Positions 5,530-36,855 of a stretch of DNA of 64,000 nucleotides are shown here, piece after piece. The position numbers were made by a program, and so were the translations under genes. Each line of letters begins with the position of its first letter. Position 1 is the first letter of the stretch. Under the pieces are notes generated by a model. That model was not told the origin of the DNA and ran no database searches. It saw nothing but the letters and a program-made list of their open reading frames with translations. The DNA is taken from IMG/VR virus record IMGVR_UViG_3300036715_004471, positions 248,001 to 312,000 of that record; one strand, given 5' to 3'.

Positions 5530-7377
5530 TTATTTTGGTGGCGGTCCACTTGGAGGAGGAGGTGGTGCTGAAGGAGGCTCTCCACCCAAAGGTCCGGAAG
5601 GCATTGGTGGAGGCATTCCTCCGCCTGGAGGCGCGCCCAAATCTAATCCTGGCATTCCACCTGGAGGTGGAGCTCCCATTTGTCCTGGCACAGTTCCATC
5701 TGCACCTGGTTGTGCAGGATTTTGTGATTGAGGAATTTCATCTTCATCATCCAAAGCTCTCAAAGAATTCAGATCAAGAGTGTCCAAAGACATTTGTTCT
5801 TTCTTAGCAATAGCATTTTGAATGGCTTCTTTACGTATCTTTCTAGTTTCATCTTCAAATTCTAAACCCATAGAACGATATAAAGTGTGAACTGATGCTC
5901 TTTTTTGATCGGCAGTTCCTTGTGTCAAGGTAACTAAAGTATTTATATAATCACCAGCATCAAATAATGACATATGATTCCAATCAATCTCTGGAACAAT
6001 TAATTGTTTTTCTCCATTGGAATAATCATAAAATCCTTGAATCTTAGAGATTGGGGCAAAAATCTTTCTTTTCAACCAAGTTGACATCATATTACGAAAT
6101 TGCATGTAACGCTGTCTCAAAACATCTAATGCTACACCACCGTTTGCATACGTAGTATCAGCACCACCATCCATTAAGACTGGTGGAACTTGTAATCCAA
6201 CATATATTTCTTTGATTATTTGAGTGATATCTCCAGAAATATCATATATGCCTTGACCATATCCAACTCTTTCAACTGCCACTCCTGCATGAGTAAAGAT
6301 TTTGAAATCTTTATCATATTGAGCTTCTTCGAAAATGCTTCTCCAAGCTTCTAAATCAGCAAATGTAGGATGAAGAGCATCATTTCCTTCTCCACCAATT
6401 TTTACTAAAGTTAATGGATTGATCATGTTATCTGCTTGAGCATACTTAGATTCTCTCAATTTATCGAATAACATAAGCTGTCTAAAAATACAAACAGGAA
6501 GCCCCGTGCCCCTGATTTCATAAGGGCTGATTCTTCTGGCTAAATGAGAAACATGAAAATTATCCAAAGGAATATTTTCGCCACGCTTTACAGAATCAAT
6601 AATGTGTTGATTAAGTTGTTTACGTTGTTCAATATCAGTTGATTTATTGGAAAAAATGATTTTCTTTAAATTCTCATCAGGATGTAACATGATAATTGGT
6701 TCATTAGCCACCACAGTACGTTTTACCAACATATAATCTGGGTTTTGAATCAATAATCTACTCCACTTACCCCTGCTTTCATCCAATTCAGCATAAACAA
6801 AAGATTCTCCCAAAAGCCAATACTCTTGAGCAATCTGCACGCAAATATTCATTAAATCAATTTCCTCAATCATGTCATTGAAGAATTTCTCAATATCTTT
6901 ATTGGGACATTTAATATTCAATTTGCTAATTGGATATGTACTATGAAGGTTAATAGCATTATGTACGAATGGATTCAAAGCATAAAAACTGCGACACCAA
7001 GCATTAATAGTAGCTCTATCTCTAGGAAGATTTAAGTTGCTATTAAGCCAAAGTGGAGAATATACTTCGGGAGCCTGCTTAACAGTGTCTCCATTTCCAC
7101 CACGATAACCGCCACCACTAACAATTTGAGCATATTTTTTCATGCCCACAGAAGCGGTAACAAATGAATTATGAGTTAAGTCATTTTCTTTATTAGAAGG
7201 ACCCGAACCATCTCTGAAGAAACCTTGTTCTACCTCATCTGCTAATCCGTCTCTACGTACGCTAGAAACGCCTTGAGCCATTAGAGCACTAACTTGGGGA
7301 ACAGTTGATCTTTTTTGCATAAACTGTTCTGAATTAGATGGTCCAACCCACCGTTTTGAAGATTTATTTACAGCCAT
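5530..7377 (-). CDS. portal protein (putative) with Pro/Gly-rich C-terminal tail
   Basis: 615 aa, immediately downstream of the terminase; NPFVHNAINLH, HLARRISPYEIRGT and NPLTLVKIG segments resemble large-phage portals. Confidence 0.7.
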   Translation of the reverse strand: MAVNKSSKRWVGPSNSEQFMQKRSTVPQVSALMAQGVSSVRRDGLADEVEQGFFRDGSGPSNKENDLTHNSFVTASVGMKKYAQIVSGGGYRGGNGDTVKQAPEVYSPLWLNSNLNLPRDRATINAWCRSFYALNPFVHNAINLHSTYPISKLNIKCPNKDIEKFFNDMIEEIDLMNICVQIAQEYWLLGESFVYAELDESRGKWSRLLIQNPDYMLVKRTVVANEPIIMLHPDENLKKIIFSNKSTDIEQRKQLNQHIIDSVKRGENIPLDNFHVSHLARRISPYEIRGTGLPVCIFRQLMLFDKLRESKYAQADNMINPLTLVKIGGEGNDALHPTFADLEAWRSIFEEAQYDKDFKIFTHAGVAVERVGYGQGIYDISGDITQIIKEIYVGLQVPPVLMDGGADTTYANGGVALDVLRQRYMQFRNMMSTWLKRKIFAPISKIQGFYDYSNGEKQLIVPEIDWNHMSLFDAGDYINTLVTLTQGTADQKRASVHTLYRSMGLEFEDETRKIRKEAIQNAIAKKEQMSLDTLDLNSLRALDDEDEIPQSQNPAQPGADGTVPGQMGAPPPGGMPGLDLGAPPGGGMPPPMPSGPLGGEPPSAPPPPPSGPPPK

Positions 7378-7437: not shown

Positions 7438-9318
7438 TTAAAATCTACGTCCAATATGCCCAGTGGTAATCAGTGGCTTGTTGGCTTCTTGAAACGTTTG
7501 TTGTTGAATCATTGGATTATTATTCTTGAAACCTTTAGTTAAGATAAACTTATAAGCCAAATAAGCATTTAATAAAGCCATAAATCCATCGTTTGGAGTA
7601 CCGCCTTTTACATAATGAATACTATGATCTCCATATTTAGAAATAGAAGGACTAATTTCCATACTAGCACAATGCTCGATTAACCAAGCAATTTTTTCAT
7701 AATCTCCAAAAGGAAACTTAACGTTACCCTTTTTCATTAATTCATAAAATTCACCAATATAATGATCTCTTTCAAAAACAATCTCTTTAGGAAAAGCATC
7801 AGCAGTATATTTAACGTGACCATTGACTTTATTATGAGCACGGGAAACTAGATAACGATCTCCATAAACATTATGCAACATTGAAGAAAAATCTTGAGAG
7901 AAACCAATATCTCCAACCGCCAACTGCACACTATATTGTCTCATAATTTGGTCAATTAAACCTTTCTTACTTTCCATATCATTTCTTTTGAATTTTGTTG
8001 CAAATTCAATGGATAATAAGTTTGGTCCTTTTGCTATTAATACTACGGCTGTGCTATAAGATTGACCTGTTAATTTAACTTTTTCTGGATTTGCTAACTG
8101 CTCTAAATCTGAACGAGCACCATAATCGATCCCTAAAACAACCAATTGATCTTTACTAGGTTCTATTCTGGCTCTAAATTTTCTACCGGGCTCGCCGCAC
8201 ATTTCCCTAATTTCTTCTACTGAAATTGGAGAGGCATCACCTTGATAAAATTCTCCCAATACTTCATTTTGATACACGCGTTCAGTGTTGATAGGATGTT
8301 TGCCCGGCTTTTCATTAATCAAATCTTCTCTGGTAAACATGGGCATGTAAATCTGATTGATATGAAAACCTATCATTTGACAATCTGGATCTTGTTCTGA
8401 TTTCAAAGCAATCCACTTGCCTCTTTCAGCAGCTTCGCGCTTATCTTGTTCATGACCACAATGAACACATTTAACTATGAATCCATGTATCCATATTTTT
8501 TCCCAATCATCACTTCCAGGAGTATATAATGGAAAATGATTCTCACATTTTTCACATCCTAAATAGAAGTATTGCTGAGATGATGATTGCCACATCTTGT
8601 GAAAATCAGAGCCTTTACGACGCGGCGTTCCAAAGTATACTTGTACACCTTTAGTTGGTTTACCATACTTAGCCGTAGTTAATACCTTCAAAGAGTTACC
8701 AATAGCCATACTGGTAGTCTTCTGAACTTCATCAAAAAATAACACATCAGCCGTACGACCCATGATGCGATCTCCATCCAAACCTACAGATTCTACCCAA
8801 ATATGATTTCCATTTACAAATTGTTTGAAATGCAAAGAATCATTGGTTGCACTGGTTTGATCTAATAATGATTGCATGTATGATTTAGGTCTCGCTGCTT
8901 TTTTACTTTCTTCTGGATTAGCTGGAAGAGACGAAGAAATCATTTGATTCAATTTAGTTTTAGAATAGGCGGCAGCTAATTCTAATTGAGGAAAAGCATG
9001 AATTACTCTAATTGGCGGCTTATCACCACTTCCAAAAATACCAGAGCCCATGAAGTACATTTCTAAAGCACCTGCCATGGTTGTTCCTCCAACCTGACGT
9101 CCCTTTACCATAATAACTGGTTTGGCATTTGGCTCTAAAGCTTTTATTCCAATGTATCTATAGATATCAGAAAAAGGTTTATACCCGTTGCCACTCAGAC
9201 GAAATGGTTTTCCATCTAGAGTAAGATAGTGCTCTACAAAAGCCACGGGATCAAGCATTATAAGTTGTCTTTTTAACTTTTCAAATAGTTCTTTGTCATC
9301 AATATTTAATGTCGGCAT
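7438..9318 (-). CDS. terL: terminase large subunit (lambda GpA-like)
   Basis: Walker A region VKGRQVGGTT, Walker B LFFDEVQ, CxxC pairs CEKC/CVHC between the domains, nuclease LGIDYG. Confidence 0.9.
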   Translation of the reverse strand: MPTLNIDDKELFEKLKRQLIMLDPVAFVEHYLTLDGKPFRLSGNGYKPFSDIYRYIGIKALEPNAKPVIMVKGRQVGGTTMAGALEMYFMGSGIFGSGDKPPIRVIHAFPQLELAAAYSKTKLNQMISSSLPANPEESKKAARPKSYMQSLLDQTSATNDSLHFKQFVNGNHIWVESVGLDGDRIMGRTADVLFFDEVQKTTSMAIGNSLKVLTTAKYGKPTKGVQVYFGTPRRKGSDFHKMWQSSSQQYFYLGCEKCENHFPLYTPGSDDWEKIWIHGFIVKCVHCGHEQDKREAAERGKWIALKSEQDPDCQMIGFHINQIYMPMFTREDLINEKPGKHPINTERVYQNEVLGEFYQGDASPISVEEIREMCGEPGRKFRARIEPSKDQLVVLGIDYGARSDLEQLANPEKVKLTGQSYSTAVVLIAKGPNLLSIEFATKFKRNDMESKKGLIDQIMRQYSVQLAVGDIGFSQDFSSMLHNVYGDRYLVSRAHNKVNGHVKYTADAFPKEIVFERDHYIGEFYELMKKGNVKFPFGDYEKIAWLIEHCASMEISPSISKYGDHSIHYVKGGTPNDGFMALLNAYLAYKFILTKGFKNNNPMIQQQTFQEANKPLITTGHIGRRF

Positions 9319-9344
9319 ATCAAAATAACGTTATATGCAGGAAT

Positions 9345-10004
9345 ATGACTTCACAGAAAAATAGGGATCCAGTACAATGTATCAAATGCCACGTTATGTT
9401 AAAACTAGAAGAAAATTGGAAAGAGTATCTTAAAAAGAGGGGAAATTATATATGTGACACTTGTTTTTCGGACTATGGTAAAACATATTATCAAAAAGAT
9501 TCTGTATCAAATTCCAATAAACAATTGGCGCGCTCACGTGTTAAAAAAAGCGCTGTAATTTTCGCGTACGGTGACAAATGCGCTATTTGTCAAGAAGATG
9601 ATTATGACAAATTGACAATTGTTAATTTGAATGGTCCCAAACATAAACATGGAAATATCTATGATTGGCTGTATGATCATGTAACAAAAAAAGACAATTA
9701 TCAAGTACTATGTTACAACTGTGAAAAAAGCAAAATCTCTTATAAAGATAAGTATGCCTTGGAAAATAAGAAGATTGTAATGGAAAAATTTGGGGGATGT
9801 TGTATTGAATGTCAAGAAGATAAAATTGAAAAATTGATTCTACAAAAGACAATTGGCGGTGAGGATCACCGCCAATTACATTCTGGTTCAAATCTATATA
9901 GATGGTTAATTAAAAATCATTATCCGATTGAATTACAGGTTGTTTGTTTTAATTGTTATTTTAGTAAGCTCAATAGGAAAGTATTAGATCTTGACCGGAT
10001 TTAA
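9345..10004 (+). CDS. degenerate tandem HNH-like (His-Me finger) endonuclease, opposite strand
   Basis: Two copies of (Y/F)GxxCxxC...LYxWL...QVxC(Y/F)NC; start 9345 has AGGA upstream; canonical DH lost in both copies. Confidence 0.6.
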   Translation: MTSQKNRDPVQCIKCHVMLKLEENWKEYLKKRGNYICDTCFSDYGKTYYQKDSVSNSNKQLARSRVKKSAVIFAYGDKCAICQEDDYDKLTIVNLNGPKHKHGNIYDWLYDHVTKKDNYQVLCYNCEKSKISYKDKYALENKKIVMEKFGGCCIECQEDKIEKLILQKTIGGEDHRQLHSGSNLYRWLIKNHYPIELQVVCFNCYFSKLNRKVLDLDRI

Positions 10005-12000: not shown

Positions 12001-12324
12001 TTAAGAACGTTGCTTTCTATTTGAGTCATTATCTTCAATCCAAAAATCATCTGCTTTATATTTGTCCTGCATATGTTTACGTTTAGCATCTCTGAATTCT
12101 TTAATGCTTTTATATTTATGCATGTGATGCCATCCAGCACCAGGACCTAATTTAGGTTTTCCATCTACACCTTCAACATCATATAAATCAAAATTTCTGT
12201 AGAAAGGTTCTTTGAAACGAGGTTGAACTAAAATAGCCTTTTCTGCCTTATACTTTTTCTTTTTAGGGGTTGGCTCATTGCCGCCTCCGCCCCCTTGAAA
12301 ATATGCTGTTTTATTTTGAGACAC
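12001..12324 (-). CDS. hypothetical basic protein
   Basis: GTG start after AAGGTGG, overlapping the upstream stop. Confidence 0.65.
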   Translation of the reverse strand: MSQNKTAYFQGGGGGNEPTPKKKKYKAEKAILVQPRFKEPFYRNFDLYDVEGVDGKPKLGPGAGWHHMHKYKSIKEFRDAKRKHMQDKYKADDFWIEDNDSNRKQRS

Positions 12325-13084
12325 TTATTCCACCTTTAACATGTTTGTTATAATATGGATACATAATCTCAGTAATAGGAACATAATTCCATATATTCAT
12401 TTTAGTCAAATTATAACTAGCACGGTCGGCATCTCTTTTGAAAGCCTCGTTCAATTTATCATTCAATGATTTTTCGGTAGCAATTCTAACTGAATTTGGA
12501 TTCTTTTTAACGAAATCTACTATTGACTGATCAATATCAAAACCCAATTTAGAAGCCAAATACACTGCTCTAATAACTCTGTTCTTATTTGAAGTTAATG
12601 TTATCTGTGGACTCAGACAAGTTTTAATTTTCTTTTCTTTGATATCCTTAAATCCGGCACGTGTCGGATCAATAATATTTTTTAAATCCAAAGATAACAG
12701 TAAAGCATTACAAGTAAAATCTCGACTAAACATTTCTTTTTGCATTTCTGTTGGATTTGCAATACCTTGTTTATTCAAAATAACTTCAATGCCGGGCGCA
12801 TTGAAGTTTGAAGAAAAATCTATTTTCAAGTTTCCCACATGGATAGTGCTATGACCATCTTCCATGGTTTTCCTATTAATGTTGTATCTTTTCTTAAATT
12901 CTTCTGCAAACCGTTGTGATAACAAATCTACAGATTTATCTCCAGTAGTAACATCTAAATCAGAAATATTATCTAGTCTTTTTAAGTACTTATCTCTGGG
13001 CGTACCTCCGCAAATATAAGGCTCGGAAGCCTTAATCTCTTGTTGGACCGCTTTCATAGTAGAAAGTAACTCACGTAATTTCAT
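12311..13084 (-). CDS. class II tRNA nucleotidyltransferase / poly(A) polymerase family protein (short, atypical template motif)
   Basis: GGTPRD...DLD (D42/D44), third carboxylate D89, SRDFTCNA, NRVIRA...KLGF. EDxxR position reads SNKNR. Confidence 0.85.
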   Translation of the reverse strand: MKLRELLSTMKAVQQEIKASEPYICGGTPRDKYLKRLDNISDLDVTTGDKSVDLLSQRFAEEFKKRYNINRKTMEDGHSTIHVGNLKIDFSSNFNAPGIEVILNKQGIANPTEMQKEMFSRDFTCNALLLSLDLKNIIDPTRAGFKDIKEKKIKTCLSPQITLTSNKNRVIRAVYLASKLGFDIDQSIVDFVKKNPNSVRIATEKSLNDKLNEAFKRDADRASYNLTKMNIWNYVPITEIMYPYYNKHVKGGISVSK

Positions 13085-13086
13085 AA

Positions 13087-14913
13087 TTATCTAGCTGGTG
13101 CGGCTGTAGGTTTAGCTGGTTGAGGTGCTTCCGGTGGAGCAGGGGGCTTACTTAAATCTTCTTCGATATCAACTTCTGGAGTCTCTTTTGCCGGCTGCAT
13201 AGATTCTGCTAATTCACGATCAGCTTGCTCTGCTCTCATCTTTTTCTTAGTCTTATCCTTCTGTTCTTGCATTTCTAATTTTTGCCTAAATGCTTCATCT
13301 TCTGGAGATGTGCTTTTATTATCGCCTCTCAAATCTAAATCTTTTCCTTCTATTCCACCTTCCAATTTAGATAAAATATCATCTAAACGTGTAGCAATAT
13401 AGTTGTTTGATTCCAATGCTTTGTTAATAGCTTCTGATAAAGAAGGGAAGTATGCCGCCCAACCTTTACTATCTAACATCATATCAATGATTGAAAGTTG
13501 TCTTGGAATTTCTCTAGTTTTATAGACTTTGGCAATGTCTTTCAATTTGCTAATAATATCATTAACTGTTACATTAGCAAAAGCCGAATCAATGATTCTA
13601 TCAAAATCTCTTGATTCTGGTGAAGAACCTGCATCTACTTCGGCTACATTATCAGTAGAAGGTTTTAGTGTTTTTGATGGTTTTGGTGGAACCACTGGTG
13701 CGACTGGAGGTTTAGCCGGCATTTTAGATGCAGGTGGCGGAGGAACTTCTTGCGCTTCTGTAACCAATACCTCATCTTCAATATCATTAACATCTAAACT
13801 ATCGCTAACTTCTAAGATATCATCTTCTGATGCATGTTCATCATCTTTTTCACCTGGATCAAGATTCTTCAAAAATAAATCAATGCCTTTTGGTGTTGAT
13901 TCATTTGGTGCGCTTTCTGGAGGTGTTTGAGGCATTCCCGGACCAATAGATGGCAATCCTCCAGGAGCGCCAGTATTTTGTGTTGGAGGCGCTGGAGAAA
14001 CAGGAGTTATAGGCGCACCCACATCATTAGTTCCAGTTCCCGGAGGTGGCGGGTTATTGGCTTGAGAAATTGAAAATAGCAAATTAGCGGCTTTAACAAA
14101 ACCCTTCTTATTCATGATATTAGCCTCACGAATAATCATATCTTCATACAATTTAGTAGAGATACTAATCTTATTTACCATTTGAATTTTCTTTTTCAAT
14201 TGATAAATAATTTCCAATAGAGACTCAAATTCTTTTCCTGCAAAAATTTGTCCCTCATGTGTTCTTAATAATTTTTCTGCCGAATCTAATCTTCCAACAA
14301 TCTTATTTCTTTGCTTCTCTATAATACGTTTCTTTTCGGAAGCAGGAAGCTCGTCGGCAATAGAATCACGAGCCATATCAATGTCTTGTCCTTGGACAGA
14401 AGGCGTCTGTTCTTTTTGAGGATCTTGTTTGATATGCAAAAAATAACCTGGAGAACCATTTTCATACCATAATTGAGCCGTTTTGTATTTCAAATGAGTG
14501 TTTCCTTCGTAAAATTTCAACCAATTAAGAAAATCATAAGTTTCCATTGGATTCCAACCATTAGTGGCTTGTCTAATAGCGGCTATACGATTGGCACCAT
14601 TTCTTTCCTTATAATAAACTTCTCTAACTGTTTGTAACCATTTTGCAGTATCACGCGCTCCCGGAATATGAGAATATTGTTCATTATTTGGATAAGCTTT
14701 CTTATCTCCAACAATATCTCCTCTGCCTGTACCGTCTAAAAACTCTGAATCAAATCCACCATATGGATTTTTTATTTTTCCAAAGAAGTCCAATAGTTTT
14801 TGGATCTTAGCTTCCATTTCTGGTGTATAAACCTGATCTTGCTCCTCTGGAGCTACCCAAGTTTTATCTACCATTTTTGACCAAGGCATATCTGGTTTTA
14901 CTTTAATAGTCAT
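13087..14913 (-). CDS. large hypothetical protein with Pro-rich and acidic linkers
   Basis: 608-aa ORF in head module. Confidence 0.75.
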   Translation of the reverse strand: MTIKVKPDMPWSKMVDKTWVAPEEQDQVYTPEMEAKIQKLLDFFGKIKNPYGGFDSEFLDGTGRGDIVGDKKAYPNNEQYSHIPGARDTAKWLQTVREVYYKERNGANRIAAIRQATNGWNPMETYDFLNWLKFYEGNTHLKYKTAQLWYENGSPGYFLHIKQDPQKEQTPSVQGQDIDMARDSIADELPASEKKRIIEKQRNKIVGRLDSAEKLLRTHEGQIFAGKEFESLLEIIYQLKKKIQMVNKISISTKLYEDMIIREANIMNKKGFVKAANLLFSISQANNPPPPGTGTNDVGAPITPVSPAPPTQNTGAPGGLPSIGPGMPQTPPESAPNESTPKGIDLFLKNLDPGEKDDEHASEDDILEVSDSLDVNDIEDEVLVTEAQEVPPPPASKMPAKPPVAPVVPPKPSKTLKPSTDNVAEVDAGSSPESRDFDRIIDSAFANVTVNDIISKLKDIAKVYKTREIPRQLSIIDMMLDSKGWAAYFPSLSEAINKALESNNYIATRLDDILSKLEGGIEGKDLDLRGDNKSTSPEDEAFRQKLEMQEQKDKTKKKMRAEQADRELAESMQPAKETPEVDIEEDLSKPPAPPEAPQPAKPTAAPAR

Positions 14914-14918
14914 AGTGG

Positions 14919-15677
14919 TTACTCATTAATCTTTTTGTTTATGGTCTCATTGAGTAACTTAGCTTCTGCCAGCCTCATTTCTGAACTGGTACCAGACTCT
15001 TTATCTGGTGCTTTTAATTTAGCCATTTTCTCGTTAAAGACTTCCATGAAATATAAAGAAGTTTCCAAATCCATTTGAGAAAGAACTTCTTTGATTACAT
15101 CATGAAATACAGAAATATGCTGATCTACCACCTGCAAAGTAACGTTATGTTGTATTACTTGATCGGCGGCTGGTGTCTCTGTGAATTTATGACACTTATC
15201 TAATAGATTGCCTAGCACTTCTGCATAGTCAATCATTAATCTATCAATTCTAGTATTTATGTTTCGTGGATCTTCTTGAATCTCATCAAAAACTTGCGCA
15301 AAACGAGTTTCTAATCCAATTACCATTCTCTTGATAGTTTGTCTAATATCTAATTCTTCTTCTGCTGACTTTAACATAATAGTTTTGTAAGCAGGGGAAT
15401 TTTTAACAGTTAGTTGCAAATTATCTTCTGTAGAAGTGGCAAGAGCAACCTTGCTTTTGACAAGATCCTCCTGAATCAAACTATAAATATCTAAATAATT
15501 ATCTTGGAATGATTTAATAGATTTTTCAGCGATAACAAATTTTGCTTCGCTGACATTGGTGTATTTTGATTTTAACCAATCATAAATATCCTTAGATGAT
15601 ATTCCAAGGAATAGTTTAGAAATAATTTCATCCTTGTCGGGATGGTCCAATATTTTCTTGAGTGCTGTTTTGTTCAT
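14919..15677 (-). CDS. hypothetical protein; possible terminase small subunit
   Basis: N-terminal HTH-like ILDHPDKDEII..L..G.S...I..WL, central helical hairpin, head-module location. Function is inference only. Confidence 0.35.
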   Translation of the reverse strand: MNKTALKKILDHPDKDEIISKLFLGISSKDIYDWLKSKYTNVSEAKFVIAEKSIKSFQDNYLDIYSLIQEDLVKSKVALATSTEDNLQLTVKNSPAYKTIMLKSAEEELDIRQTIKRMVIGLETRFAQVFDEIQEDPRNINTRIDRLMIDYAEVLGNLLDKCHKFTETPAADQVIQHNVTLQVVDQHISVFHDVIKEVLSQMDLETSLYFMEVFNEKMAKLKAPDKESGTSSEMRLAEAKLLNETINKKINE

Positions 15678-15817
15678 TGTTCACTTTTTTCATGTTTCTT
15701 TAAAACATCTAATAAAACTTCACAATAACTAAGCATTAATTTGTCATTTTTTATGTCATGAGGGTTTGTTTGAATTTCATTGAAAACTTGACTAATTCTT
15801 TTTCTATACATATGCAT
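15674..15817 (-). pseudogene. disrupted mini-paralog of the central region of ORF 14919-15677
   Basis: Encodes RISQVFNEIQTNPHDIK and, past a stop/frame disruption near 15735-15755, SYCEVLLDVLKKH; aligns to RFAQVFDEIQEDPRNI...DYAEVLGNLLDKCH. Ends in an ATGA overlap with that gene. Confidence 0.6.
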
Positions 15818-15819
15818 AA

Positions 15820-15828
15820 ATTATAACA
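15820..15828 (-). promoter_or_regulatory. extended -10 promoter TGTTATAAT
   Basis: Perfect TGnTATAAT just after the endonuclease stop. Confidence 0.6.
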
Positions 15829-15829
15829 T

Positions 15830-16732
15830 TCATTTCTCATTTTTATTTTTCCAATCTGATTCCCAAATAGATACTAAATTATACCCGGCATTTTTTATCA
15901 TTTTCTCTCTTACCATAGTATCTTTATACAGATCACCACATCTTTTATTATTTTTGTGATTCATTGTTTCTGCATCGTAAATTTTCGGATTTCCGTGAAA
16001 ATAATCGCCATAAAATTCATAAATGGTATTGGTTTGTGGGTCAAAACCATCTGGTTTTATATACGAATCATTCATATAAATTCTACAATGTCTATGTATA
16101 TTATCATTAGATATACCCAAACTATCCAACCATTCCATTTCTGGTTTAGATGAATTGCTTGAACAGGTGGGGCATCCAACACCATTCAAATATGAATCCG
16201 GACATTGCCAAAAAGAACCATGCTTGCGGCATGATATTTCAATGTCAGTTCTGGCGTTTAAATATTCTCCTGGATAAGTGTATTTATCATTATGAATAGC
16301 ATTTGCTTCTTTAACAAATTGTAATTTTGTTTTCTTAACAGTGCCGGCGCATTTTGGACATCCATTTCCTTGTAGATGCTTATCAGGTGTTTGTAAAAAC
16401 ATGTCATGAATTTTACAATGTATTTTGATTTTGATTTTGGATCCCTTATAATCTTCCAAATATATATACTTGTTATTATGAATAATATTAGCTTTTTTTA
16501 TGAAATCTTCACTTGATTTTCTGAACAAATTCTTTCTGTATTCTATAGCACAATTAGGGCACCCACATCCTTGTAAATGACTACTTGGAATTTGTTCAAA
16601 AATTCCATGAATTGGACATTCAATACCTATTTTAATAGAATCACCGCAATAAGTATAAGGATATTTATACTTATTGCGGTGAATTTTATTAGCTTGTTCG
16701 ACAAATTGTAAATTTGTTTTCTTTAAACACAT
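15830..16732 (-). CDS. free-standing homing-type endonuclease: three Cys/His zinc-binding repeats plus C-terminal Vsr/PD-(D/E)XK-like domain
   Basis: Three repeats F..AN.IH..KY.Y...C..H..F.Q.P...L.G.GCP.C; C-terminal DGFD...IYEFYGDYFHGNP...SIWESDW. Paralog at 36856-37773. Confidence 0.75.
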   Translation of the reverse strand: MCLKKTNLQFVEQANKIHRNKYKYPYTYCGDSIKIGIECPIHGIFEQIPSSHLQGCGCPNCAIEYRKNLFRKSSEDFIKKANIIHNNKYIYLEDYKGSKIKIKIHCKIHDMFLQTPDKHLQGNGCPKCAGTVKKTKLQFVKEANAIHNDKYTYPGEYLNARTDIEISCRKHGSFWQCPDSYLNGVGCPTCSSNSSKPEMEWLDSLGISNDNIHRHCRIYMNDSYIKPDGFDPQTNTIYEFYGDYFHGNPKIYDAETMNHKNNKRCGDLYKDTMVREKMIKNAGYNLVSIWESDWKNKNEK

Positions 16733-16771
16733 ATAATAATGAGTTATTATTCCTAGAATACCTTCCCTAGT

Positions 16772-17482
16772 TTAATTATTTTGTCCCAAACGTCCGCTTC
16801 TAGTATCGAAAATTGCATGAGTAGGAACGCCTAAACCTTGAGTTTGTTGTGACACATCGCCACCAGGAACCTTGGTTCCATTATTTAACTCAAAACCAGT
16901 TTCAAAATTGTATGTTTTTTTATCCATTTCACATTGCCAAATATGCTCACCTACACGAGATATTTGAACACCCGCATGATCAGGACAATATCTTGTGCTT
17001 AAAGGAGCTTCAAGAATATTAAACTGTTTTATAAACTTGCTCTTATCAATTGCCTTTTCTGAGTCTGCAATTTTATTGGTTTTTGCTAATTCTTTACGAG
17101 GATCTTCATATTTCTTTTTCAACTCTTCTAATCTATTATCTTCTAGATCTTTTCTAGCAGCTAAAGCATTAGGTGGAGCAGCAATAGTCAACAACAACTC
17201 ATCAATTACAGATGCTTGTTTTTTTAATTCTGGATCGCCAGATGAATATAGCGCAGTAGCAAGAGCAGCCATGCCGTCTATCGAATCCGGAGTAATTACA
17301 GATTCAACAGGTTCAATAGCATCTACTTGCTCGGCGGCATTTTTTAACAATTGGGCAGCTAAAACACAAGATTCAGCCACTATGTTAGCGCAAGTGTCAT
17401 CACCTTCTGCTAACATAAGTGCTTCGTTGTTTGGACTCTCTAGCCAAGAAGCCATAGTATTCAATAATTCAGCTATTCTCAT
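16772..17482 (-). CDS. hypothetical protein with C-terminal Cys/His motif
   Basis: YCPDH...WQC near the C-terminus. Confidence 0.7.
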   Translation of the reverse strand: MRIAELLNTMASWLESPNNEALMLAEGDDTCANIVAESCVLAAQLLKNAAEQVDAIEPVESVITPDSIDGMAALATALYSSGDPELKKQASVIDELLLTIAAPPNALAARKDLEDNRLEELKKKYEDPRKELAKTNKIADSEKAIDKSKFIKQFNILEAPLSTRYCPDHAGVQISRVGEHIWQCEMDKKTYNFETGFELNNGTKVPGGDVSQQTQGLGVPTHAIFDTRSGRLGQNN

Positions 17483-18467
17483 AGGTACCCTTTAATAAAA
17501 GTTTGTCAAGAAACTTCAAAACACCGTCGCTTCGAATAAGGCGTTGACGATCTTCTTCAATTATTCTTTGAGCATGTGCATCATCTCTTTGTTGAATCAA
17601 TGGTTGCATACGCTCTCTTTCAAGCCTGGCAGCCTCTTCTTTACGCAATTTTGATTTCTCTTTTAGTTCTTTAATTTTAGCTAACTCATCTTCTGAAACT
17701 TCGGTTTCAGGCTCTGCTCCATGTTCAAAATAACTATCATTATCAGACAACCTTTGTCTGATAAGTTGAGCTAGATATTCTACCTCTCTGCTTAATTCGG
17801 GAGCATCCGCAGGACGATGACCTCTATCTATGGCATTGATAACAGTTGTTAGTTTTTGTCTTAATTCTGGATACTCCAAAACTTTCGTTACAATATCTAA
17901 AGTAGTTAACCCCATAGCTTGAGCTTCTGGAGTAATCAAAAATCTCTGTATTTTATCTTTACTTAATTCTTTTCTTTGAGGTTCAATTAAACCACCTGCT
18001 AATGACCCTTCTGGAACTAAGGTTTTTAATTTTATAGCAGCTTTTTCTAATAATCCAAAGATCCTGGTTAAAGCAGTTTCATACTTTGATTTTATATGTT
18101 CTCTGTATTGAATATCACTTTGTCTTTTGATTCTGATAGCATCATGAATAAAGTTTCTAACCTTTTTCTCTGGATCTTTTTTATATTCAGAAATGATTTT
18201 TAGAACTTCATTCACTTGTGTAAAAAGTGTGGGAGCATCGTAATCATTTATGTTTTTCACCAAATCTTCCATTATTTCAACTAATTTGGTAGTTTCTGGT
18301 TCATTAAACTCTTTTGATACTTTACTAATAACCGGTTCTTTTGCAGTTTCTGATACATGTAGCTGATAAGCTAGCTTAATTTCCTTCTTAGCCTCATCTA
18401 ATTTAGTAGAAGCTAATTTGAGAACATATTTAACCTCAACAGCTTTTGCTAGCCTCTCTGTTGTCAT
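17469..18467 (-). CDS. hypothetical coiled-coil protein
   Basis: 332-aa ORF overlapping the next gene. Confidence 0.7.
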   Translation of the reverse strand: MTTERLAKAVEVKYVLKLASTKLDEAKKEIKLAYQLHVSETAKEPVISKVSKEFNEPETTKLVEIMEDLVKNINDYDAPTLFTQVNEVLKIISEYKKDPEKKVRNFIHDAIRIKRQSDIQYREHIKSKYETALTRIFGLLEKAAIKLKTLVPEGSLAGGLIEPQRKELSKDKIQRFLITPEAQAMGLTTLDIVTKVLEYPELRQKLTTVINAIDRGHRPADAPELSREVEYLAQLIRQRLSDNDSYFEHGAEPETEVSEDELAKIKELKEKSKLRKEEAARLERERMQPLIQQRDDAHAQRIIEEDRQRLIRSDGVLKFLDKLLLKGTYENS

Positions 18468-32025: not shown

Positions 32026-32033
32026 ATATATCA
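32026..32033 (-). promoter_or_regulatory. TGATATAT putative extended -10 element overlapping the dnaE stop
   Basis: Recurring boundary octamer. Confidence 0.4.
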
Positions 32034-35000
32034 ATCATCTTGCTCTTCTTCAAGATCAATTAACCCCTCATCGTATAAAGAGTCTTCAATTTGTTCGAGT
32101 AAATTGCGAGTTTCGGTAAGTTTAGTGATAGCTTCTTGAACAAGTTTCACTTTCGAATCTTTCAGATTTACCTTTTTGGCTTTAAGGTCATCTGGCAAAC
32201 TTGGAATCATAGAAATATTGAACATATCTTCTAGAATAAGACCCATATCATCTTCATAGTTATTGGTATTTCCGCAAAAACTTAATGCAATACCCACATC
32301 AAATACTGCTTTACTATGAATTTCTTTAAGTCTATTTTGTACAATCTTCCATCTATCAGGAAAAATAGTACAAAAACACTGTTCGCCATAAGCATCTTCG
32401 ACAATTGCTTTGATCATAGATTGACCATAATATTTACTGGTTTCTTTCTTGACTTTGAATTCAAAGAAACTCCTAACCAAAGCTTTGATAGGATACAATC
32501 TGGTTTTGTCTTTTGCTCTTTTAACATCTGCTATTGTCTTATGCTCATCCTTAAAGAACTTGCCATAAGCTTCAGCAGGTTTACAAACGAAAGATTCTCC
32601 CAAATAATACTGTTCCAAAGCATACAACTCTGACAGCTTCCATTCTGCTTCTTTTGGCCAAGGATAAATAAATTCTTCTTTGTTAAGATCATGCTTCTTT
32701 AACCAAACTTGCAATTTCTTTCTATAATCTGAACAATATAGATAAATTGATTTTCTGGAAATTCCGAAATGGTCCATACTACCAGCAGCAGCTAATGCCT
32801 GAATAGCATTTGCTCTAACTTTTCTAGAATCTACTCTAACCATGAAATCGAAAAAGTTATTGAATGGTCTTTTTTCAATAATATCTTTGATTGCATCTTC
32901 GCCAACAAACTTCAAAGCATCCAAACCAGTTAACAACTTATTGTCTTTGGATATGGTGTAACTTAATTGTGATTTGTTAATATCTGGCGGAACAATCTTA
33001 ACATTATGTTGCCTTAACTCCTTCTTGATTTTTTCAATATTAGCCTTAGCATCAGGGGTGTTAGATTTAACTTCTGCCATTAAGTTTGCCATCAAGAACT
33101 CTACTGGATAATGAGCTTTTAAATAAGCTGTCTTATAACTAGTCATAGAATAAAGTACACTGTGGGACATATTAAAACCATAGCCCTGGAACTTATCTAC
33201 AACCTCATCCCAAATCTTCTTAGCGATTTCCTCACTAATATCATTCTTAACTGCATCATTAATGAATTCCAATCTCCATTGTTGAGCCTTTTTGGGATTC
33301 TTTCCTTTTTCTTTCGTTAATTTACGAAGACGATCTGCGGAATGCAAGTTCCAACCGGCAACATCTTGCGCTAAATACATTAAAGATTCTTCATACAAAC
33401 CAAATCCATAAGTATTATTAAACGCTCTTCCTAAGGAAGGGTGCAATAATGCGAATGGCTTTTTACCATCTTTGGTTGCAATAAAATCGCTACGCATATC
33501 TCTTGCAGACGGTCTTGCTAAAGAATTGACATAGCTAATATCATTGACGGATTTTGGTTTGATCTTACGACATAAATCAATAGTACCACCACTGGTACCT
33601 AATTGAAATACACAGAATGTATTTCCATGAGAAATTAAGTCGTAAGACAATTGGTCATATTCTTCATAATTCAAAGGATCTGGTGGGAGAGGCTTGCCAG
33701 ATTCCTTAATTAGTTGTAAGGTTTGTCCAATGATATCTAGAGTCGAAAGACCCAAAGTATCCATTTTAACTAAACCATTTTCTTCTGCTTTATCTTTATC
33801 GTATTCGATAGCCAAAGCACCATCTTTATCTTTTCTTAACGGAACTAATCCTGTCAATGGTCTAGCAGAAATAATAATACCACCAGCATGAGTAGACCAT
33901 GCCCTATATTTGCCACAGATTTCCTTATATCTAATGAATTCAGGATACTTTTTACAATATTCCGTGAACAAAGGTACTTTGTTCAAAGCGTCATCAATAG
34001 AATGAATATCTGCTGGAAGACAATCTGCAACATCATTTCCAATTCTAATAGCCTCCTCACGGGAGCCACCTAATTCACATGATCTTGCAATATCTCTAAC
34101 ATAAACTTTTGGTGTAATGGTATTAACGTTAGAAACGTGAGCTACGCTATCTTCGCCATATTTCTTTTTTAAGTAATCTTGTACTAATGCGCGTCCTGAT
34201 GGAGCAAAATCAGTATCAATATCAGGAAAACTTGATTTTTCTTTATTGTGGAATCTGGCAAAAATCAAGTTATACTTAATTGGATCTGCTTGATGAATTC
34301 CTAACAAGAAGGCAATTAAAGAACCTCCTACTGAACCACGACCTTCACCAACTGCTATATCATGGCGACGTGCCCAATCAATATAATCTGCCACAATTAA
34401 CATATAGCTAGAAAATCCATGATATTCTAGTACGTCCAATTCTTCTGCAATGCGTTTATTGTAAATATCACGTTCTTCGTCAGAAAGAATATTAACTCTA
34501 GAATCAAACTTAATTTCGCACCTATAACGAAGAAATAATTTGTCTTCATCTAGTTTTTGTAATTCTTCTGGCAGTTTAGATGCCCAAGTACGAAAAACTA
34601 AATAATCAACCTCATCTTTAACAGGGAAAATTGGCAATTCTTTTCCAGAAGGATTAGAGTATTTTGGATCTATCCAATTGGGGAATTCGCATAGAGAAGC
34701 AAAATGTACACTGTTGGCACAAACTTGTTCAGCAAATTCTTCACCGAAATTTCTAGAAAAGAAGTTTTTTACTTCATCACCAGACTTGAGATAAAAATCT
34801 GGAACATTATATTTAAGCCTGAAATTAGAATATGCCGGCTGATGCGATCCAATTGCTAAGAAAACATCATGGATATCATGATCTTCTTTCTTAAGGTAAT
34901 GAGCATTACAAGCAGCAACTAAACGAATATTATATTTCTTACCTAATTCAATTAATCTACGATTAAGGAATCTTTGATCAATTTTATCAGAATAGAAATT

Positions 35001-35546
35001 AGAACCTCGATCCATATTGTTTGGCAGAATTTCAATTCCTAAATTGTCTCCAAATATATCTTTTAGTTTGAGAAGAGTTTTTTCTGCCTCATCAAACTTA
35101 CCGTTGGTCAACAATTGTGAAACAATACCATTACCGCAAGCGGTCAAACAAATTAGACCTTCGCCGTAAGTCTCTAATAGTTTCCAGTCAACCACAGGAT
35201 AAACTCTTTTACCTAAAAAAGCACCTTGGTCGAAACCTTTTTTATTGATTGTTAATAGATTTTTGTAACCTATTGCATTCTTTGCCAATAAAATTACATG
35301 GCGGAATTTATCTTCCACATTATCAGAAGAATTTTGAAAATAGCATTCACACCCCATGATTAACTTAATCCCTGTTTCTTTGGAAGCCTTCAGAGCGTCC
35401 CATGCAGAAGCAAGTGTACCGTGATCTGTGATTGCAATCGCTGATTGCCCAAGCTCTTTAGCTCTTAAAAAGAGCTCCTTGGGAGAAATAAGAGAATCTA
35501 GAATAGAAAAATACGTTTGATTGTGTAACGATACAAAATCAGTCAT
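32031..35546 (-). CDS. dnaE: DNA polymerase III alpha subunit (family C)
   Basis: PHP (LHNQ, ITDHG, GCE), GRGSVGGSL, PDIDTDF, KMDTLGL, YGFNMSHS, C-terminal OB; no intein. Confidence 0.96.
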   Translation of the reverse strand: MTDFVSLHNQTYFSILDSLISPKELFLRAKELGQSAIAITDHGTLASAWDALKASKETGIKLIMGCECYFQNSSDNVEDKFRHVILLAKNAIGYKNLLTINKKGFDQGAFLGKRVYPVVDWKLLETYGEGLICLTACGNGIVSQLLTNGKFDEAEKTLLKLKDIFGDNLGIEILPNNMDRGSNFYSDKIDQRFLNRRLIELGKKYNIRLVAACNAHYLKKEDHDIHDVFLAIGSHQPAYSNFRLKYNVPDFYLKSGDEVKNFFSRNFGEEFAEQVCANSVHFASLCEFPNWIDPKYSNPSGKELPIFPVKDEVDYLVFRTWASKLPEELQKLDEDKLFLRYRCEIKFDSRVNILSDEERDIYNKRIAEELDVLEYHGFSSYMLIVADYIDWARRHDIAVGEGRGSVGGSLIAFLLGIHQADPIKYNLIFARFHNKEKSSFPDIDTDFAPSGRALVQDYLKKKYGEDSVAHVSNVNTITPKVYVRDIARSCELGGSREEAIRIGNDVADCLPADIHSIDDALNKVPLFTEYCKKYPEFIRYKEICGKYRAWSTHAGGIIISARPLTGLVPLRKDKDGALAIEYDKDKAEENGLVKMDTLGLSTLDIIGQTLQLIKESGKPLPPDPLNYEEYDQLSYDLISHGNTFCVFQLGTSGGTIDLCRKIKPKSVNDISYVNSLARPSARDMRSDFIATKDGKKPFALLHPSLGRAFNNTYGFGLYEESLMYLAQDVAGWNLHSADRLRKLTKEKGKNPKKAQQWRLEFINDAVKNDISEEIAKKIWDEVVDKFQGYGFNMSHSVLYSMTSYKTAYLKAHYPVEFLMANLMAEVKSNTPDAKANIEKIKKELRQHNVKIVPPDINKSQLSYTISKDNKLLTGLDALKFVGEDAIKDIIEKRPFNNFFDFMVRVDSRKVRANAIQALAAAGSMDHFGISRKSIYLYCSDYRKKLQVWLKKHDLNKEEFIYPWPKEAEWKLSELYALEQYYLGESFVCKPAEAYGKFFKDEHKTIADVKRAKDKTRLYPIKALVRSFFEFKVKKETSKYYGQSMIKAIVEDAYGEQCFCTIFPDRWKIVQNRLKEIHSKAVFDVGIALSFCGNTNNYEDDMGLILEDMFNISMIPSLPDDLKAKKVNLKDSKVKLVQEAITKLTETRNLLEQIEDSLYDEGLIDLEEEQDD

Positions 35547-35661: not shown

Positions 35662-36327
35662 TTACCCGCACAGTATAGATTTTAGACTTTTTTCGTCAAG
35701 GTCATCGCCATTTTCGAAAATATAGTCAATGTTTTTAAATTGCGCTTTCCAAAATTCTTTATTTTCAGATTTTTTAGTTAGAATCTCTTTCAAATCTGAA
35801 AAGTAAAGTCTTTTCTTTTGGAAAAGAGCATGAGAAACTAAAACAACTGCTTCCCAATGTTGTTGAACCTCATAATGAGTTTCTTTAATTAACTTTTTTT
35901 TGAGATTATATCTTTTTCTGCCTGGTGTTGCTAATTGTTTAATCAACGCCGCAGCAGCCATAGTATCACTTGATGATCCATTTTTCCAAAATCCGGGAAA
36001 TTTATCGGATCCTGAAACATTTTTAAAATGATACTTTTCGGCAATCAAACCTGCGTAATTAACACAGATATCTGATTTCATTAATTGTTTTGATAGCTCA
36101 GAATCTTCTACTTCCATGGCTATTGGATAGTTAAAATGTGTAAAACCACATATTCTTTTTGATTTCTTATCTTCAAAAATATGCACCATATTAACCTTCA
36201 TATAGTGCAATAGCCCATAAATCGTATGACCAGCCTCATGATAAGCGGTAGATATCAATTCATGTGTGTGAGTGACTTTCTTTCTAATATTTTCTATGGA
36301 TCCTGAGCTATTAGCAGTCATATTCAC
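35662..36327 (-). CDS. stand-alone M41 (FtsH-protease-like) zinc metallopeptidase domain
   Basis: TAYHEAGH (HEXXH), YAGLIAE, GSSSD (cf. FtsH GASND). Confidence 0.75.
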   Translation of the reverse strand: MNMTANSSGSIENIRKKVTHTHELISTAYHEAGHTIYGLLHYMKVNMVHIFEDKKSKRICGFTHFNYPIAMEVEDSELSKQLMKSDICVNYAGLIAEKYHFKNVSGSDKFPGFWKNGSSSDTMAAAALIKQLATPGRKRYNLKKKLIKETHYEVQQHWEAVVLVSHALFQKKRLYFSDLKEILTKKSENKEFWKAQFKNIDYIFENGDDLDEKSLKSILCG

Positions 36328-36602
36328 CCTATTGTTTGAAGTAATGCCTCAAGATCATTAAGTTTTTGGTCGCATTCCGCAGCCTTACACTTTACTTGAA
36401 GTCGGTCCGAGCCGATCGGACCCGTCACTATAAAGTCCGAATTATCGGCATATAGGATTCCAGCTTTAGTAAAATGTTGATGCTCGTTGAATCCAACCTT
36501 GACCAACCCCGCCAAATGTACTTTGGTTAAGGGTTGGTCAGTCTTAAAGATTATTGACATTCTTCCACAACAGGATTGAATAGTAAACTTTTCAACCTTC
36601 AT
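36324..36602 (-). CDS. hypothetical protein
   Basis: 92 aa, Cys-containing, ATGA overlap. Confidence 0.65.
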   Translation of the reverse strand: MKVEKFTIQSCCGRMSIIFKTDQPLTKVHLAGLVKVGFNEHQHFTKAGILYADNSDFIVTGPIGSDRLQVKCKAAECDQKLNDLEALLQTIG

Positions 36603-36605
36603 GAA

Positions 36606-36851: not shown

Positions 36852-36855
36852 ATAA

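What the first reader, a model, noticed from the sequence alone, without database searches (positions are those of the whole stretch)
15674..15828. Apparent intergenic gap encodes a decayed mini-copy of the central hairpin of the downstream (putative TerS) gene
Seen: the 144 nt between the endonuclease and ORF 14919 encode RISQVFNEIQTNPHDIK and SYCEVLLDVLKKH, about 20 of 43 identical by eye to RFAQVFDEIQEDPRNINTRIDRLMIDYAEVLGNLLDKCHK of ORF 14919. It has its own TGTTATAAT element, an ATG, and an ATGA overlap with the target gene. The frame is broken near homopolymer runs at about 15735-15755. Known: small terminases oligomerise through a central helical hairpin. Inference: either a scar of an allele displaced by homing, or (if the break is an assembly error) a ~48-aa dominant-negative or regulatory mimic.
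Basis: partly seen in the sequence, partly recalled or inferred. Interest (0 to 1): 0.6.

Follow-up and report, generated by a model that had tools for sequence, protein, structure and literature searches.

The report
Small hairpin-protein gene beside homing endonuclease
The supposed intergenic scar in this 446-kb phage is a real small gene: it belongs to a conserved, unannotated family of 45-65-residue helical hairpins related to the central hairpin of the neighbouring 252-residue protein, and it sits with a homing endonuclease at an insertion hot spot.

Summary
The similarity is real. The 47-aa product of 15674-15817(-) matches residues 125-161 of the downstream 252-aa protein ("big252"): 18/37 identical, E 1e-9, and 0 of 20,000 shuffles reach the score.

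It is not a broken gap or a decaying scar:
- An intact copy lies in a relative that has diverged by dS of about 0.8, with dN/dS 0.17.
- An exhaustive profile search found seven more stand-alone 50-88-aa proteins of this kind. Profile-profile comparison with big252 gives 98.7% probability, E 2e-16.

At this junction the gene occurs as endonuclease+mini in three lineages and as mini alone in one. Most relatives lack both, including a near-identical strain in an independent metagenome.

The window's copy does carry a lesion, but elsewhere. Its A-run at 15799-15803 is one base shorter than in the two relatives checked. This puts the family's start and first 14 codons out of frame and leaves a 45-47-aa ORF from an internal ATG.

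The small-terminase label for big252 is unsupported. The TGTTATAAT element is just Cys-Tyr-Asn codons and is not conserved.

The likely role is inferred, not shown: a translationally coupled hairpin mimic that engages big252 or its partner. The complex prediction gave no verdict.

The parts
15674..15817 (-). Mini ORF as it stands in the window: 47 aa from ATG 15817, or 45 aa from ATG 15811. It is a helix-loop-helix hairpin paralogous to big252 residues about 115-167.
   Evidence: ORF list. BLASTP E 1e-9. Shuffle z 12.4. The 45-aa form is a called protein on 2 contigs. AF2 hairpin, pLDDT 83. Family HMM E 3e-24.
15799..15840 (-). The family's start codon (ATG 15838-15840, overlapping the endonuclease's end by 11 nt) and first 14 codons. 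They are now in another frame, within the 29-aa ORF 15751-15840.
   Evidence: The translation of this frame matches the N-terminal consensus of the family, closest to P0004 and L005.
15799..15803 (-). A5 run. L005 and L172 have A6 here. The one-base difference is the frameshift that truncates the window's copy.
   Evidence: Sequence comparison. Contigs of the probable source run (X1) show no difference here, and L004, from another IMG/VR data set, is identical at protein level across the mini. No raw reads were available.
15674..15677 (-). ATGA: the mini's stop codon overlaps big252's start codon (translational coupling). L005 has the equivalent TAATG. In L172 the mini overlaps the start of big252 by 41 nt.
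15820..15828 (-). TGTTATAAT. These are codons Cys-Tyr-Asn of the family's N-terminus, not a conserved promoter.
   Evidence: L005 has TATCGTAAT and L172 has TGTTATGAC at the same place. The sigma-70 scan gives no hit here, and the region has 14 promoter-like sites against 13.5 expected.
15830..16732 (-). Free-standing homing-endonuclease gene, 300 aa. It has three CapR/treble-clef zinc-finger repeats and a C-terminal nuclease domain with a weak, sub-threshold match to the REase_MTES_1575 family.
   Evidence: PHROG 681 (E 4e-42) and 559 (E 2e-39). Pfam CapR, DUF4379 and MTES_1575 match below their cut-offs. The gene is absent from most relatives at this site.
15679..16798 (.). Presence/absence unit: the last 27 nt of up236 (stop codon included), the spacer, the endonuclease and the mini. 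A near-identical strain has 65 other letters in place of these 1120 nt.
   Evidence: Record 27 of run X4 (an independent aquatic metagenome) covers 15059-15678 with 1 difference. It then joins to 16799-17412 with 9 differences.
14919..15677 (-). big252: a conserved all-helical 252-aa protein of unknown function, the parent-type protein of the hairpin.
   Evidence: About 80 homologous loci and a second subfamily of about 65 proteins. AF2 pLDDT 66. No family or fold assignment.
15177..15335 (-). Part of big252 (residues 115-167) that is homologous to the mini family. It contains the motif E.R..Q.FD.IQ..PR.IN...DR....Y, conserved at 90% or more within the segment examined (residues 119-166).
   Evidence: hhalign aligns columns 5-55 of the mini family with 115-167 of big252, probability 98.7%, E 2.3e-16. 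Conservation line.
16772..17482 (-). up236: the conserved upstream neighbour. In most relatives it lies 17-130 nt before big252.

Best explanation
The stretch is a protein-coding gene of a previously unannotated family of stand-alone helical-hairpin proteins. In full length they are about 50-65 aa. They are homologous to the central hairpin (residues about 115-167) of the conserved 252-aa phage protein encoded immediately downstream.

It is an accessory gene whose presence varies between strains. It lies at the up236|big252 junction, a hot spot for homing endonucleases. In this lineage it lies directly behind a zinc-finger (CapR-like) endonuclease, and the two are gained or lost together.

Its translation is chained to its neighbours. 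In full-length copies the start codon overlaps the end of the preceding gene. Its stop codon overlaps the start of big252.

Inferred mechanism: the free hairpin keeps helix 1 of the parent's most conserved motif (E.R..Q.F..IQ..P) but lacks the rest of the protein. It would therefore occupy the surface that big252's own hairpin binds, either a second big252 subunit or a shared partner. Made just ahead of big252, it would tune or cap assembly of big252, as a microProtein does.

The window's own copy has lost its first 14 codons to a one-base change in an A-run. It may be weakened.

Shown: homology, coding constraint, family membership, gene order, presence/absence polymorphism. Inferred: binding, and any effect on big252.
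For: - Homology: BLASTP E 1e-9, shuffle z 12.4, hhalign 98.7%, E 2.3e-16.
- Coding constraint, window versus L005, 40 codons: 10.5 synonymous changes on 21 sites against 12.5 non-synonymous on 99 sites. dS is 0.82, like the neighbours at 0.71-0.88, and dN/dS is 0.17.
- Fisher p is 1e-4 to 1e-3. Of neutral simulations, 83% acquire a stop, and P(12 or fewer aa changes and no stop) = 0.002.
- The two copies reach the core from different ATGs after the A5/A6 change.
- Family: P0002, P0004, P0007, P0008, P0010, P0012 and P0013 are all open and 31-42% identical to one another. All have 5 residues between the conserved P (R in P0010) and D.
- Contexts: endonuclease+mini+big252 in the window/L004, L005 and L170/171. 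Mini+big252 without the endonuclease in L172.
- Empty site in a near-identical strain.
- All four junction-type minis fall in one well-supported 7-row clade of big252, each next to a mini-less sister.
- Hairpin fold.
- big252 has no Shine-Dalgarno-like motif in the window, and its start overlaps the mini's stop.
Against: - No expression data: no RNA run holds the stretch.
- The complex prediction gave no verdict.
- The selection estimate rests on one pair and 40 codons.
- The window's copy lacks the family's first 14 residues, including the conserved Glu, and has no ribosome-binding motif of its own.
- Other family members (P0008, P0010, P0012, P0013) have no big252 gene among the called genes of the stretch recovered around them. 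The family therefore need not act on big252.
- No big252 residue co-varies with the presence of the mini.
- The function of big252 is unknown.
Confidence: 0.55

Rival explanations
1. In this particular genome the mini is a freshly inactivated pseudogene. The one-base loss in the A-run removed the true start and the first 14 codons. The remaining 47-codon ORF from an internal ATG is fortuitous and not made in useful amounts. The family would be real, but the window's copy dead.
For: - A5 here against A6 in L005 and L172.
- The lost part carries the family's conserved Glu and about half of helix 1.
- No Shine-Dalgarno-like motif lies before ATG 15817 or 15811.
- The upstream ATG that is coupled to the endonuclease now opens a 29-aa dead-end frame.
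Against: - Two in-frame ATGs lie right at the break, and the stop-start overlap with big252 is kept.
- By eye against P0002 and P0004, the window's branch shows no excess of amino-acid changes over L005's.
- The rest of the ORF is free of stops in AT-rich DNA, where 83% of neutral simulations acquire one. A very recent frameshift would leave no such trace, however.
Confidence: 0.25
2. The mini matters only in cis. It would be a short translated spacer that hands ribosomes from the endonuclease (or up236) to big252. It would also interrupt the endonuclease's recognition site at the up236|big252 junction, making carriers immune. This resembles an intron in collaborative homing. The peptide itself would have no function.
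For: - Start and stop overlaps on both sides in all full-length copies.
- The junction is a homing hot spot holding at least two nuclease types, plus remnants.
- Between near-identical strains the differences cluster at the up236 end, as expected around a cleavage site.
- Trans and collaborative homing are documented in T4-type phages (PMC2790892, PMC2988022).
Against: - A spacer would not keep its amino-acid sequence. Helix 2 shows seven synonymous differences and one residue change.
- Other endonucleases occupy the same site without any mini (L011, L036, L064, L077).
- Family members exist at unrelated loci with no recognisable endonuclease gene next to them.
Confidence: 0.12
3. A decaying scar of a big252 allele displaced or partly duplicated during homing.
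For: - Partial duplications of target genes do occur next to endonucleases of these phages.
- In L117 a 38-aa 5' fragment (82% identical) of the downstream gene lies upstream of the endonuclease.
- In L025 an HNH-type endonuclease begins with big252's first 8 codons.
- P0003 is a 73-aa piece of a true long-loop big252.
Against: - dN/dS is 0.17 at dS 0.82.
- The ORF is open in every relative found.
- The mini is about 35% identical to every big252 hairpin, no closer to the resident one.
- It shares a 5-residue loop with all other stand-alone members, whereas the resident subfamily has 7.
- It is retained after loss or absence of the endonuclease in L172.
Confidence: 0.06
4. The mini is a functional small protein that shares only ancestry and fold with big252 and acts on something else. 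Its position next to big252 would be a historical accident of the insertion hot spot.
For: - P0010 and P0012 lie after an MGMT-like gene near DHFR (thymidylate synthase too in L173). P0008 lies before a NUDIX gene. P0013 lies near an ADP-ribosylglycohydrolase gene.
- Antiparallel hairpins are generic interaction modules. The VIA matches at Z about 8 are all unrelated hairpins.
Against: - Four independent lineages keep the mini immediately upstream of big252 and translationally coupled to it.
- The motif conserved in the minis is helix 1 of the best-conserved motif of big252.
Confidence: 0.2

Closest known systems
microProteins (miPs): small single-domain paralogues that engage their larger relatives (PMC5381583, PMC9638782)
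   Same: A protein under 100 aa consisting of one domain that is homologous to an internal helical domain of a larger protein. It is encoded as a separate gene and evolves faster than the parent.
   Different: miPs are described in plants and animals, mostly for transcription factors, and their binding to the parent is demonstrated. Here binding is untested. The host is a huge phage, the gene is translationally coupled to the parent gene, and it is linked to a homing endonuclease.
Free-standing homing-endonuclease cassettes and HEG cargo in phages: T4 seg/mob genes, ICP1 CapR-domain HEGs and HEG-islands (PMC2988022, PMC2790892, PMC10448857)
   Same: An endonuclease with repeated CapR-type zinc fingers sits between two conserved genes. 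Presence and absence differ between near-identical genomes. Differences cluster on one flank. Several nuclease types and remnants occupy the same site. A neighbouring gene travels with the nuclease.
   Different: The passenger is not a core gene or an intron. It is a small paralogue of part of the adjacent core gene, and it can persist without the nuclease (L172). Cleavage site and homing were not tested.
Foreign gene pieces left beside mobile endonuclease ORFs (from my own knowledge: the Allomyces mitochondrial atp6 hybrid gene). In this data set: L117 and L025
   Same: A piece of the target gene lies next to an endonuclease gene.
   Different: Those pieces are terminal fragments of close alleles and decay, or are fused to the gene. 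The mini is an internal domain, anciently diverged, open and under purifying selection.
Small terminase subunits (TerS) and their mimics or hijackers (from my own knowledge: SaPI TerS, Ppi, Rpp)
   Same: big252 has a small N-terminal helical domain followed by long helices. A language-model feature search puts clusters carrying Terminase_5 and Mu Gp27 among the nearest named ones, at score 0.90, which is a lead only.
   Different: No TerS profile, solved structure or fold match was found, and the gene is not next to the large terminase. The terminase reading is therefore unsupported.

Membership tests
Small terminase subunit (TerS), for big252 | Match to a TerS sequence family (Pfam or PHROG terminase small-subunit profiles) | tested here: not met
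   There is no TerS hit for the window protein or for 49 homologues scanned one by one. The only hits are sub-threshold and unrelated. The PDB profile search gives nothing below E 0.1.
Small terminase subunit (TerS), for big252 | Fold: N-terminal helix-turn-helix DNA-binding domain plus central oligomerisation helices resembling solved TerS rings | tested here: inconclusive
   The AF2 model is all-helical with pLDDT 66. Foldseek finds no match at E 0.001 or better. VIA finds only generic hairpins at Z about 8 over residues 104-174, so the N-terminal domain was barely tested. The Atlas feature search gives only a lead: Terminase_5 and Mu Gp27 clusters at 0.90.
Small terminase subunit (TerS), for big252 | Gene immediately upstream of the large terminase gene | tested here: not met
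   The large terminase is at 7438-9318(-) and the portal at 5530-7377(-). big252 is 5.6 kb away, with at least five ORFs between.
Free-standing homing endonuclease cassette | ORF with nuclease and DNA-binding domains lying between conserved genes | tested here: met
   PHROG 681 and 559, E 4e-42 and 2e-39. CapR, DUF4379 and MTES_1575 match weakly. The gene lies between up236 and big252.
Free-standing homing endonuclease cassette | Presence/absence polymorphism at the same site among close relatives | tested here: met
   There is an empty site in L003 (big252 97% identical) and in the X4 contig (1 difference in 620 nt). Most of about 80 loci are empty.
Free-standing homing endonuclease cassette | Site-specific cleavage of the empty allele and biased inheritance in co-infection | not testable with these tools
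   This needs enzyme assays or phage crosses.
microProtein-type domain paralogue | Small single-domain protein homologous to a domain of a larger protein | tested here: met
   The proteins are 45-88 aa and consist of one hairpin. hhalign to big252 residues 115-167 gives 98.7%, E 2.3e-16.
microProtein-type domain paralogue | Physically engages the parent protein or its partner | tested here: inconclusive
   The complex prediction of big252 with the mini scored 0.06 against a mark of 0.32. The tool's verdict is no answer.
Pseudogene or homing scar | Neutral evolution (dN/dS near 1) and disrupted frames in relatives | tested here: not met
   dN/dS is 0.17. The ORF is open in L005, L170/171, L172 and seven further family members. 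Only the window's copy has a 5' frameshift.

The most novel reading that the evidence does not exclude
The endonuclease and the hairpin mini-protein form a two-part selfish module. The nuclease spreads the cassette in mixed infections. The mini-protein interferes with the big252 assemblies of co-infecting rivals, or retunes the carrier's own. That would make it a homing cassette carrying a protein-level weapon or modulator aimed at the very gene it sits beside. If big252 proved to be the missing small terminase of these huge phages, this would be a phage-borne packaging modulator moved by homing.
Probability: 0.1. Interest if true: 0.8.

Novelty: new variant of a known kind. Interest (0 to 1): 0.5.

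Why it matters
- The finding turns an apparent intergenic remnant into a member of an unannotated small-protein family found in huge environmental phages.
- It gives a clean natural series at one junction: empty, mini alone, and endonuclease plus mini, among closely related genomes.
- That series makes two questions testable. Can homing-endonuclease cassettes carry, and be stabilised by, small proteins that mimic part of the adjacent core gene? Do phages use microProtein-style domain paralogues to regulate assembly proteins?
- It also marks big252 and its conserved hairpin motif as a functionally important, uncharacterised core module of these phages.

Tried and rejected
- Complex prediction of big252 with the mini: no verdict (score 0.06). 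It is not used as evidence either way.
- Naming big252: Pfam and PHROGs gave nothing. The PDB sequence profile gave nothing. Foldseek gave nothing at E 0.001 or better. VIA wide gave only generic hairpins. The Atlas gave a weak terminase/HTH lead only.
- The mini family against Pfam and the PDB: nothing.
- The phage GenBank collection: no DNA or protein match for the region.
- The metagenome scan with the two-sequence mini alignment: 600 pattern hits, none confirmed.
- The word-index protein search with the mini found only itself. The family appeared only in the exhaustive HMM search.
- Viral-contig scans with P0004 and P0010: nothing.
- A fusion of the mini to the endonuclease or to big252 by frameshifting: rejected. 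No slippery site is shared by the window and L005, and the frames needed differ between them.
- A mini-like remnant behind the other endonucleases at this site (L011, L036, L064, L077, L094): none.
- A second mini elsewhere in the 446-kb genome: none.
- big252 residues that co-vary with the presence of the mini (allele-specific resistance): none, apart from one variable linker column.
- Origin of the minis from big252 subfamily A or B: unresolved. The loop length is as in B and the identity is slightly higher to A. The quick tree on 54 columns is poorly resolved. The careful tree and the AU test did not finish.
- Small ORFs behind the second endonuclease paralogue (36324-36911): PHROG scan only, with weak unknown-function hits. 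They were not compared with their neighbours.
- RNA families and terminators in 14800-17600: nothing relevant to the mini.

Full report
SETTING

The window is bases 248001-312000 of a 446.5-kb virus record. It encodes a large terminase (7438-9318, minus strand), a portal (5530-7377), a DNA polymerase (32031-35546) and an SbcC-like protein. Almost all genes lie on the minus strand.

The finding lies in this gene run, all on the minus strand:
- up332 (17469-18467)
- up236 (16772-17482)
- a 300-aa endonuclease (15830-16732)
- the stretch in question (15674-15817)
- big252 (14919-15677)
- a 608-aa protein (13087-14913)

THE OBSERVATION

The quoted peptides are there, and the similarity is not chance.
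- BLASTP of the 47-aa product against big252 gives 18/37 identities over residues 125-161, E 1e-9.
- The Smith-Waterman score is 83, against 27.7 +/- 4.5 for 20,000 shuffles. None exceeds 57.
- TGTTATAAT (15820-15828), an ATG (15815-15817) and the ATGA overlap (15674-15677) are all present.
- The reported frame break at 15735-15755 does not exist. Both peptides lie in one uninterrupted 47-codon ORF. A 45-aa form, starting at the second ATG, is already a called protein on two contigs.

RELATIVES AT THE SAME JUNCTION

Scans of viral contigs gave about 80 loci with the conserved block up236-big252-down608. Most have up236 followed by big252 after 17-130 nt, with neither endonuclease nor mini.

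The junction is an insertion hot spot:
- Zinc-finger endonucleases of the window's type, 41-60% identical, sit there in L011/L056, L036-39, L064 and L077. Remnants remain in L017/18, L028 and L094.
- An unrelated HNH-type endonuclease sits there in L025.

The mini occurs:
- with the endonuclease in the window, in the identical L004, and in L005;
- with a 63%-identical endonuclease in L170/L171;
- without any endonuclease in L172. There up236's stop overlaps the mini's start, and the mini overlaps the start of big252.

On a big252 tree, all four junction-type minis fall within one well-supported clade of seven rows. Each is paired with a mini-less sister.

Contigs of an independent aquatic metagenome (run X4) show the empty site in an almost identical background:
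- 15059-15678 has 1 difference.
- It joins to 16799-17412, which has 9 differences.
- The 1120 nt between them are replaced by 65 other letters.

The endonuclease and the mini are therefore gained or lost as one unit between near-isogenic strains. The differences cluster on the up236 side, as expected near a cleavage site (inference).

IS IT A SCAR OR A GENE?

L005 carries an intact 54-codon ORF. Between the window and L005, synonymous divergence is high and uniform across the region: dS is 0.71-0.88 in five neighbouring genes.

The mini core (40 codons) has dS 0.82 but dN 0.14, so dN/dS is 0.17. The same ratio is 0.13 for the endonuclease, 0.03 for big252 and 0.13-0.16 for up332 and down608.

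The contrast between synonymous and non-synonymous changes is significant:
- 10.5 changes on 21 synonymous sites against 12.5 on 99 non-synonymous sites, Fisher p 1e-4 to 1e-3.
- In neutral simulations with the same number of changes, 83% acquire a stop. Only 0.2% stay open with 12 or fewer residue changes.
- Helix 2 alone carries seven synonymous differences against one residue change.

An exhaustive profile search of 1.84 billion representative proteins then found seven further stand-alone proteins of 50-88 aa. It also found one big252 homologue and one 73-aa fragment of a true big252.

The stand-alone proteins align cleanly. As a profile they match big252 residues 115-167 with probability 98.7%, E 2.3e-16.

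They are old:
- Each is about 27-41% identical to big252 hairpins and 31-42% identical to the other minis.
- That is as far apart as the two full-length big252 subfamilies are from each other, at 34%.
- All minis have five residues between the conserved Pro (Arg in P0010) and Asp. This matches big252 subfamily B, whereas the resident subfamily A has seven.

So the mini is not a recent decayed copy of the gene beside it. It is a member of a long-lived small-protein family that shares a domain with big252. Some members lie at other loci:
- P0010 and P0012 lie after an MGMT-like gene near DHFR.
- P0008 lies before a NUDIX gene.
- P0013 lies near an ADP-ribosylglycohydrolase gene.

THE REAL LESION IN THE WINDOW'S COPY

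The family begins with M.NE...L...IE.R. In the window exactly this peptide is encoded from ATG 15838-15840, which overlaps the endonuclease's stop by 11 nt as in L005. But it is in a different frame from the rest.
- The window has five A at 15799-15803. L005 and L172 have six.
- The remaining ORF restarts at ATG 15817 or 15811.
- It lacks about half of helix 1, including the conserved Glu.
- Contigs of the probable source run show no difference here, and L004 from another data set is identical at protein level. Raw reads were not available.
- By eye, the window's branch shows no excess of residue changes over L005's when P0002 and P0004 are used as outgroups.
- Whether the truncated form is functional cannot be told.

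The TGTTATAAT element is simply the Cys-Tyr-Asn codons of that displaced N-terminus. It reads TATCGTAAT in L005 and TGTTATGAC in L172, so it is not a conserved promoter.

STRUCTURE AND THE IDENTITY OF big252

The AF2 model of big252, built on 49 homologues, is all-helical with mean pLDDT 66. It has a long antiparallel hairpin, H111-135 and H143-166.

The mini, modelled on an alignment dominated by those hairpins, gives helix 3-17, a loop, and helix 22-46, with pLDDT 83.

Fold searches return only generic hairpins. No Pfam, PHROG or PDB family matches big252. It is not adjacent to the large terminase.

A language-model feature search lists clusters carrying Terminase_5 and Mu Gp27 among the nearest named ones, at 0.90. 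By the tool's own calibration that is a lead only. The small-terminase label is therefore unsupported.

MECHANISM

Shown:
- The gene encodes a conserved helical hairpin.
- It keeps helix 1 of the parent's best-conserved motif.
- In full-length copies its start overlaps the end of the preceding gene. Its stop or tail overlaps big252's start.
- In the window big252 has no Shine-Dalgarno-like motif of its own.

Inferred: the free hairpin is made stoichiometrically just ahead of big252. It occupies the surface that the parent's hairpin uses, either another big252 subunit or a common partner, and so modulates assembly in the manner of a microProtein (PMC5381583).

Its link to the endonuclease is best read as hitch-hiking of cargo in a homing cassette (PMC10448857, PMC2988022). 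L172 shows that it is kept without the nuclease.

Limits:
- The single complex prediction gave no verdict.
- No big252 residue tracks the presence of the mini. This argues against an allele-specific poison-antidote scheme.

Rivals, each scored in its own section:
- The window's copy is a fresh pseudogene.
- The mini has a purely cis role, in translational coupling and target-site disruption.
- It is a true scar.
- It is a functional protein that acts on something other than big252.

VERDICT

This is a new variant of known kinds, namely a microProtein-like domain paralogue carried as cargo of a free-standing homing endonuclease. It is of moderate interest.

Noticed in passing
window 16641-16682 (inside the 5' part of the endonuclease ORF): A perfect 18-bp inverted repeat with a 6-nt spacer. 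L005 has a 20-nt, 85% complementary repeat at the same place, with a G-to-A change in one arm matched by C-to-T in the other. It is absent in L170. It could be a regulatory hairpin or a binding site.
   Followed up: partly
window 36856-37773(-): A second endonuclease paralogue (47% identical) lies upstream of the DNA-polymerase region. It is followed by two small ORFs of 101 and 92 aa with no informative family match.
   Followed up: partly
window 9309-10004(+): One of the few long plus-strand ORFs in the window (231 aa). It matches HNH-endonuclease PHROGs and abuts the start of the large terminase gene.
   Followed up: no
L025 5324-6004 and 6001-6762: An HNH-type endonuclease at the same junction begins with the same eight residues as big252. 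The 24 nt differ at four positions, all synonymous. The nuclease has captured a copy of the target gene's start.
   Followed up: partly
L117 2364-2477 and 3545-4060: A related endonuclease is flanked upstream by a 38-aa 5' fragment (82% aa, 75% nt identity) of the gene that follows it. This is a genuine homing-type partial duplication at another locus.
   Followed up: partly
L178 1027-1248 (P0003): A 73-aa ORF that is a piece of a true long-loop big252 hairpin region. It sits on a 1.6-kb contig between opposite-strand genes, one with an alanine-dehydrogenase/PNT domain. It is either a fragment in a non-phage context or a chimeric contig.
   Followed up: no
window 15745-15803: Contigs of runs X1 and X2 break here, or run on into unlike sequence, at 15759, 15762 and 15802. 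This suggests co-existing variants that diverge inside or just upstream of the mini.
   Followed up: no
L179/L180 and P0015-P0079: A second subfamily of big252-like proteins, about 65 proteins and 33% identical to the window's. It occurs on contigs of 1-266 kb, so the protein is not confined to 400-kb phages.
   Followed up: partly
window 12311-13084(-): A CCA-adding / poly(A)-polymerase-type nucleotidyltransferase gene lies just downstream of the 608-aa protein.
   Followed up: no
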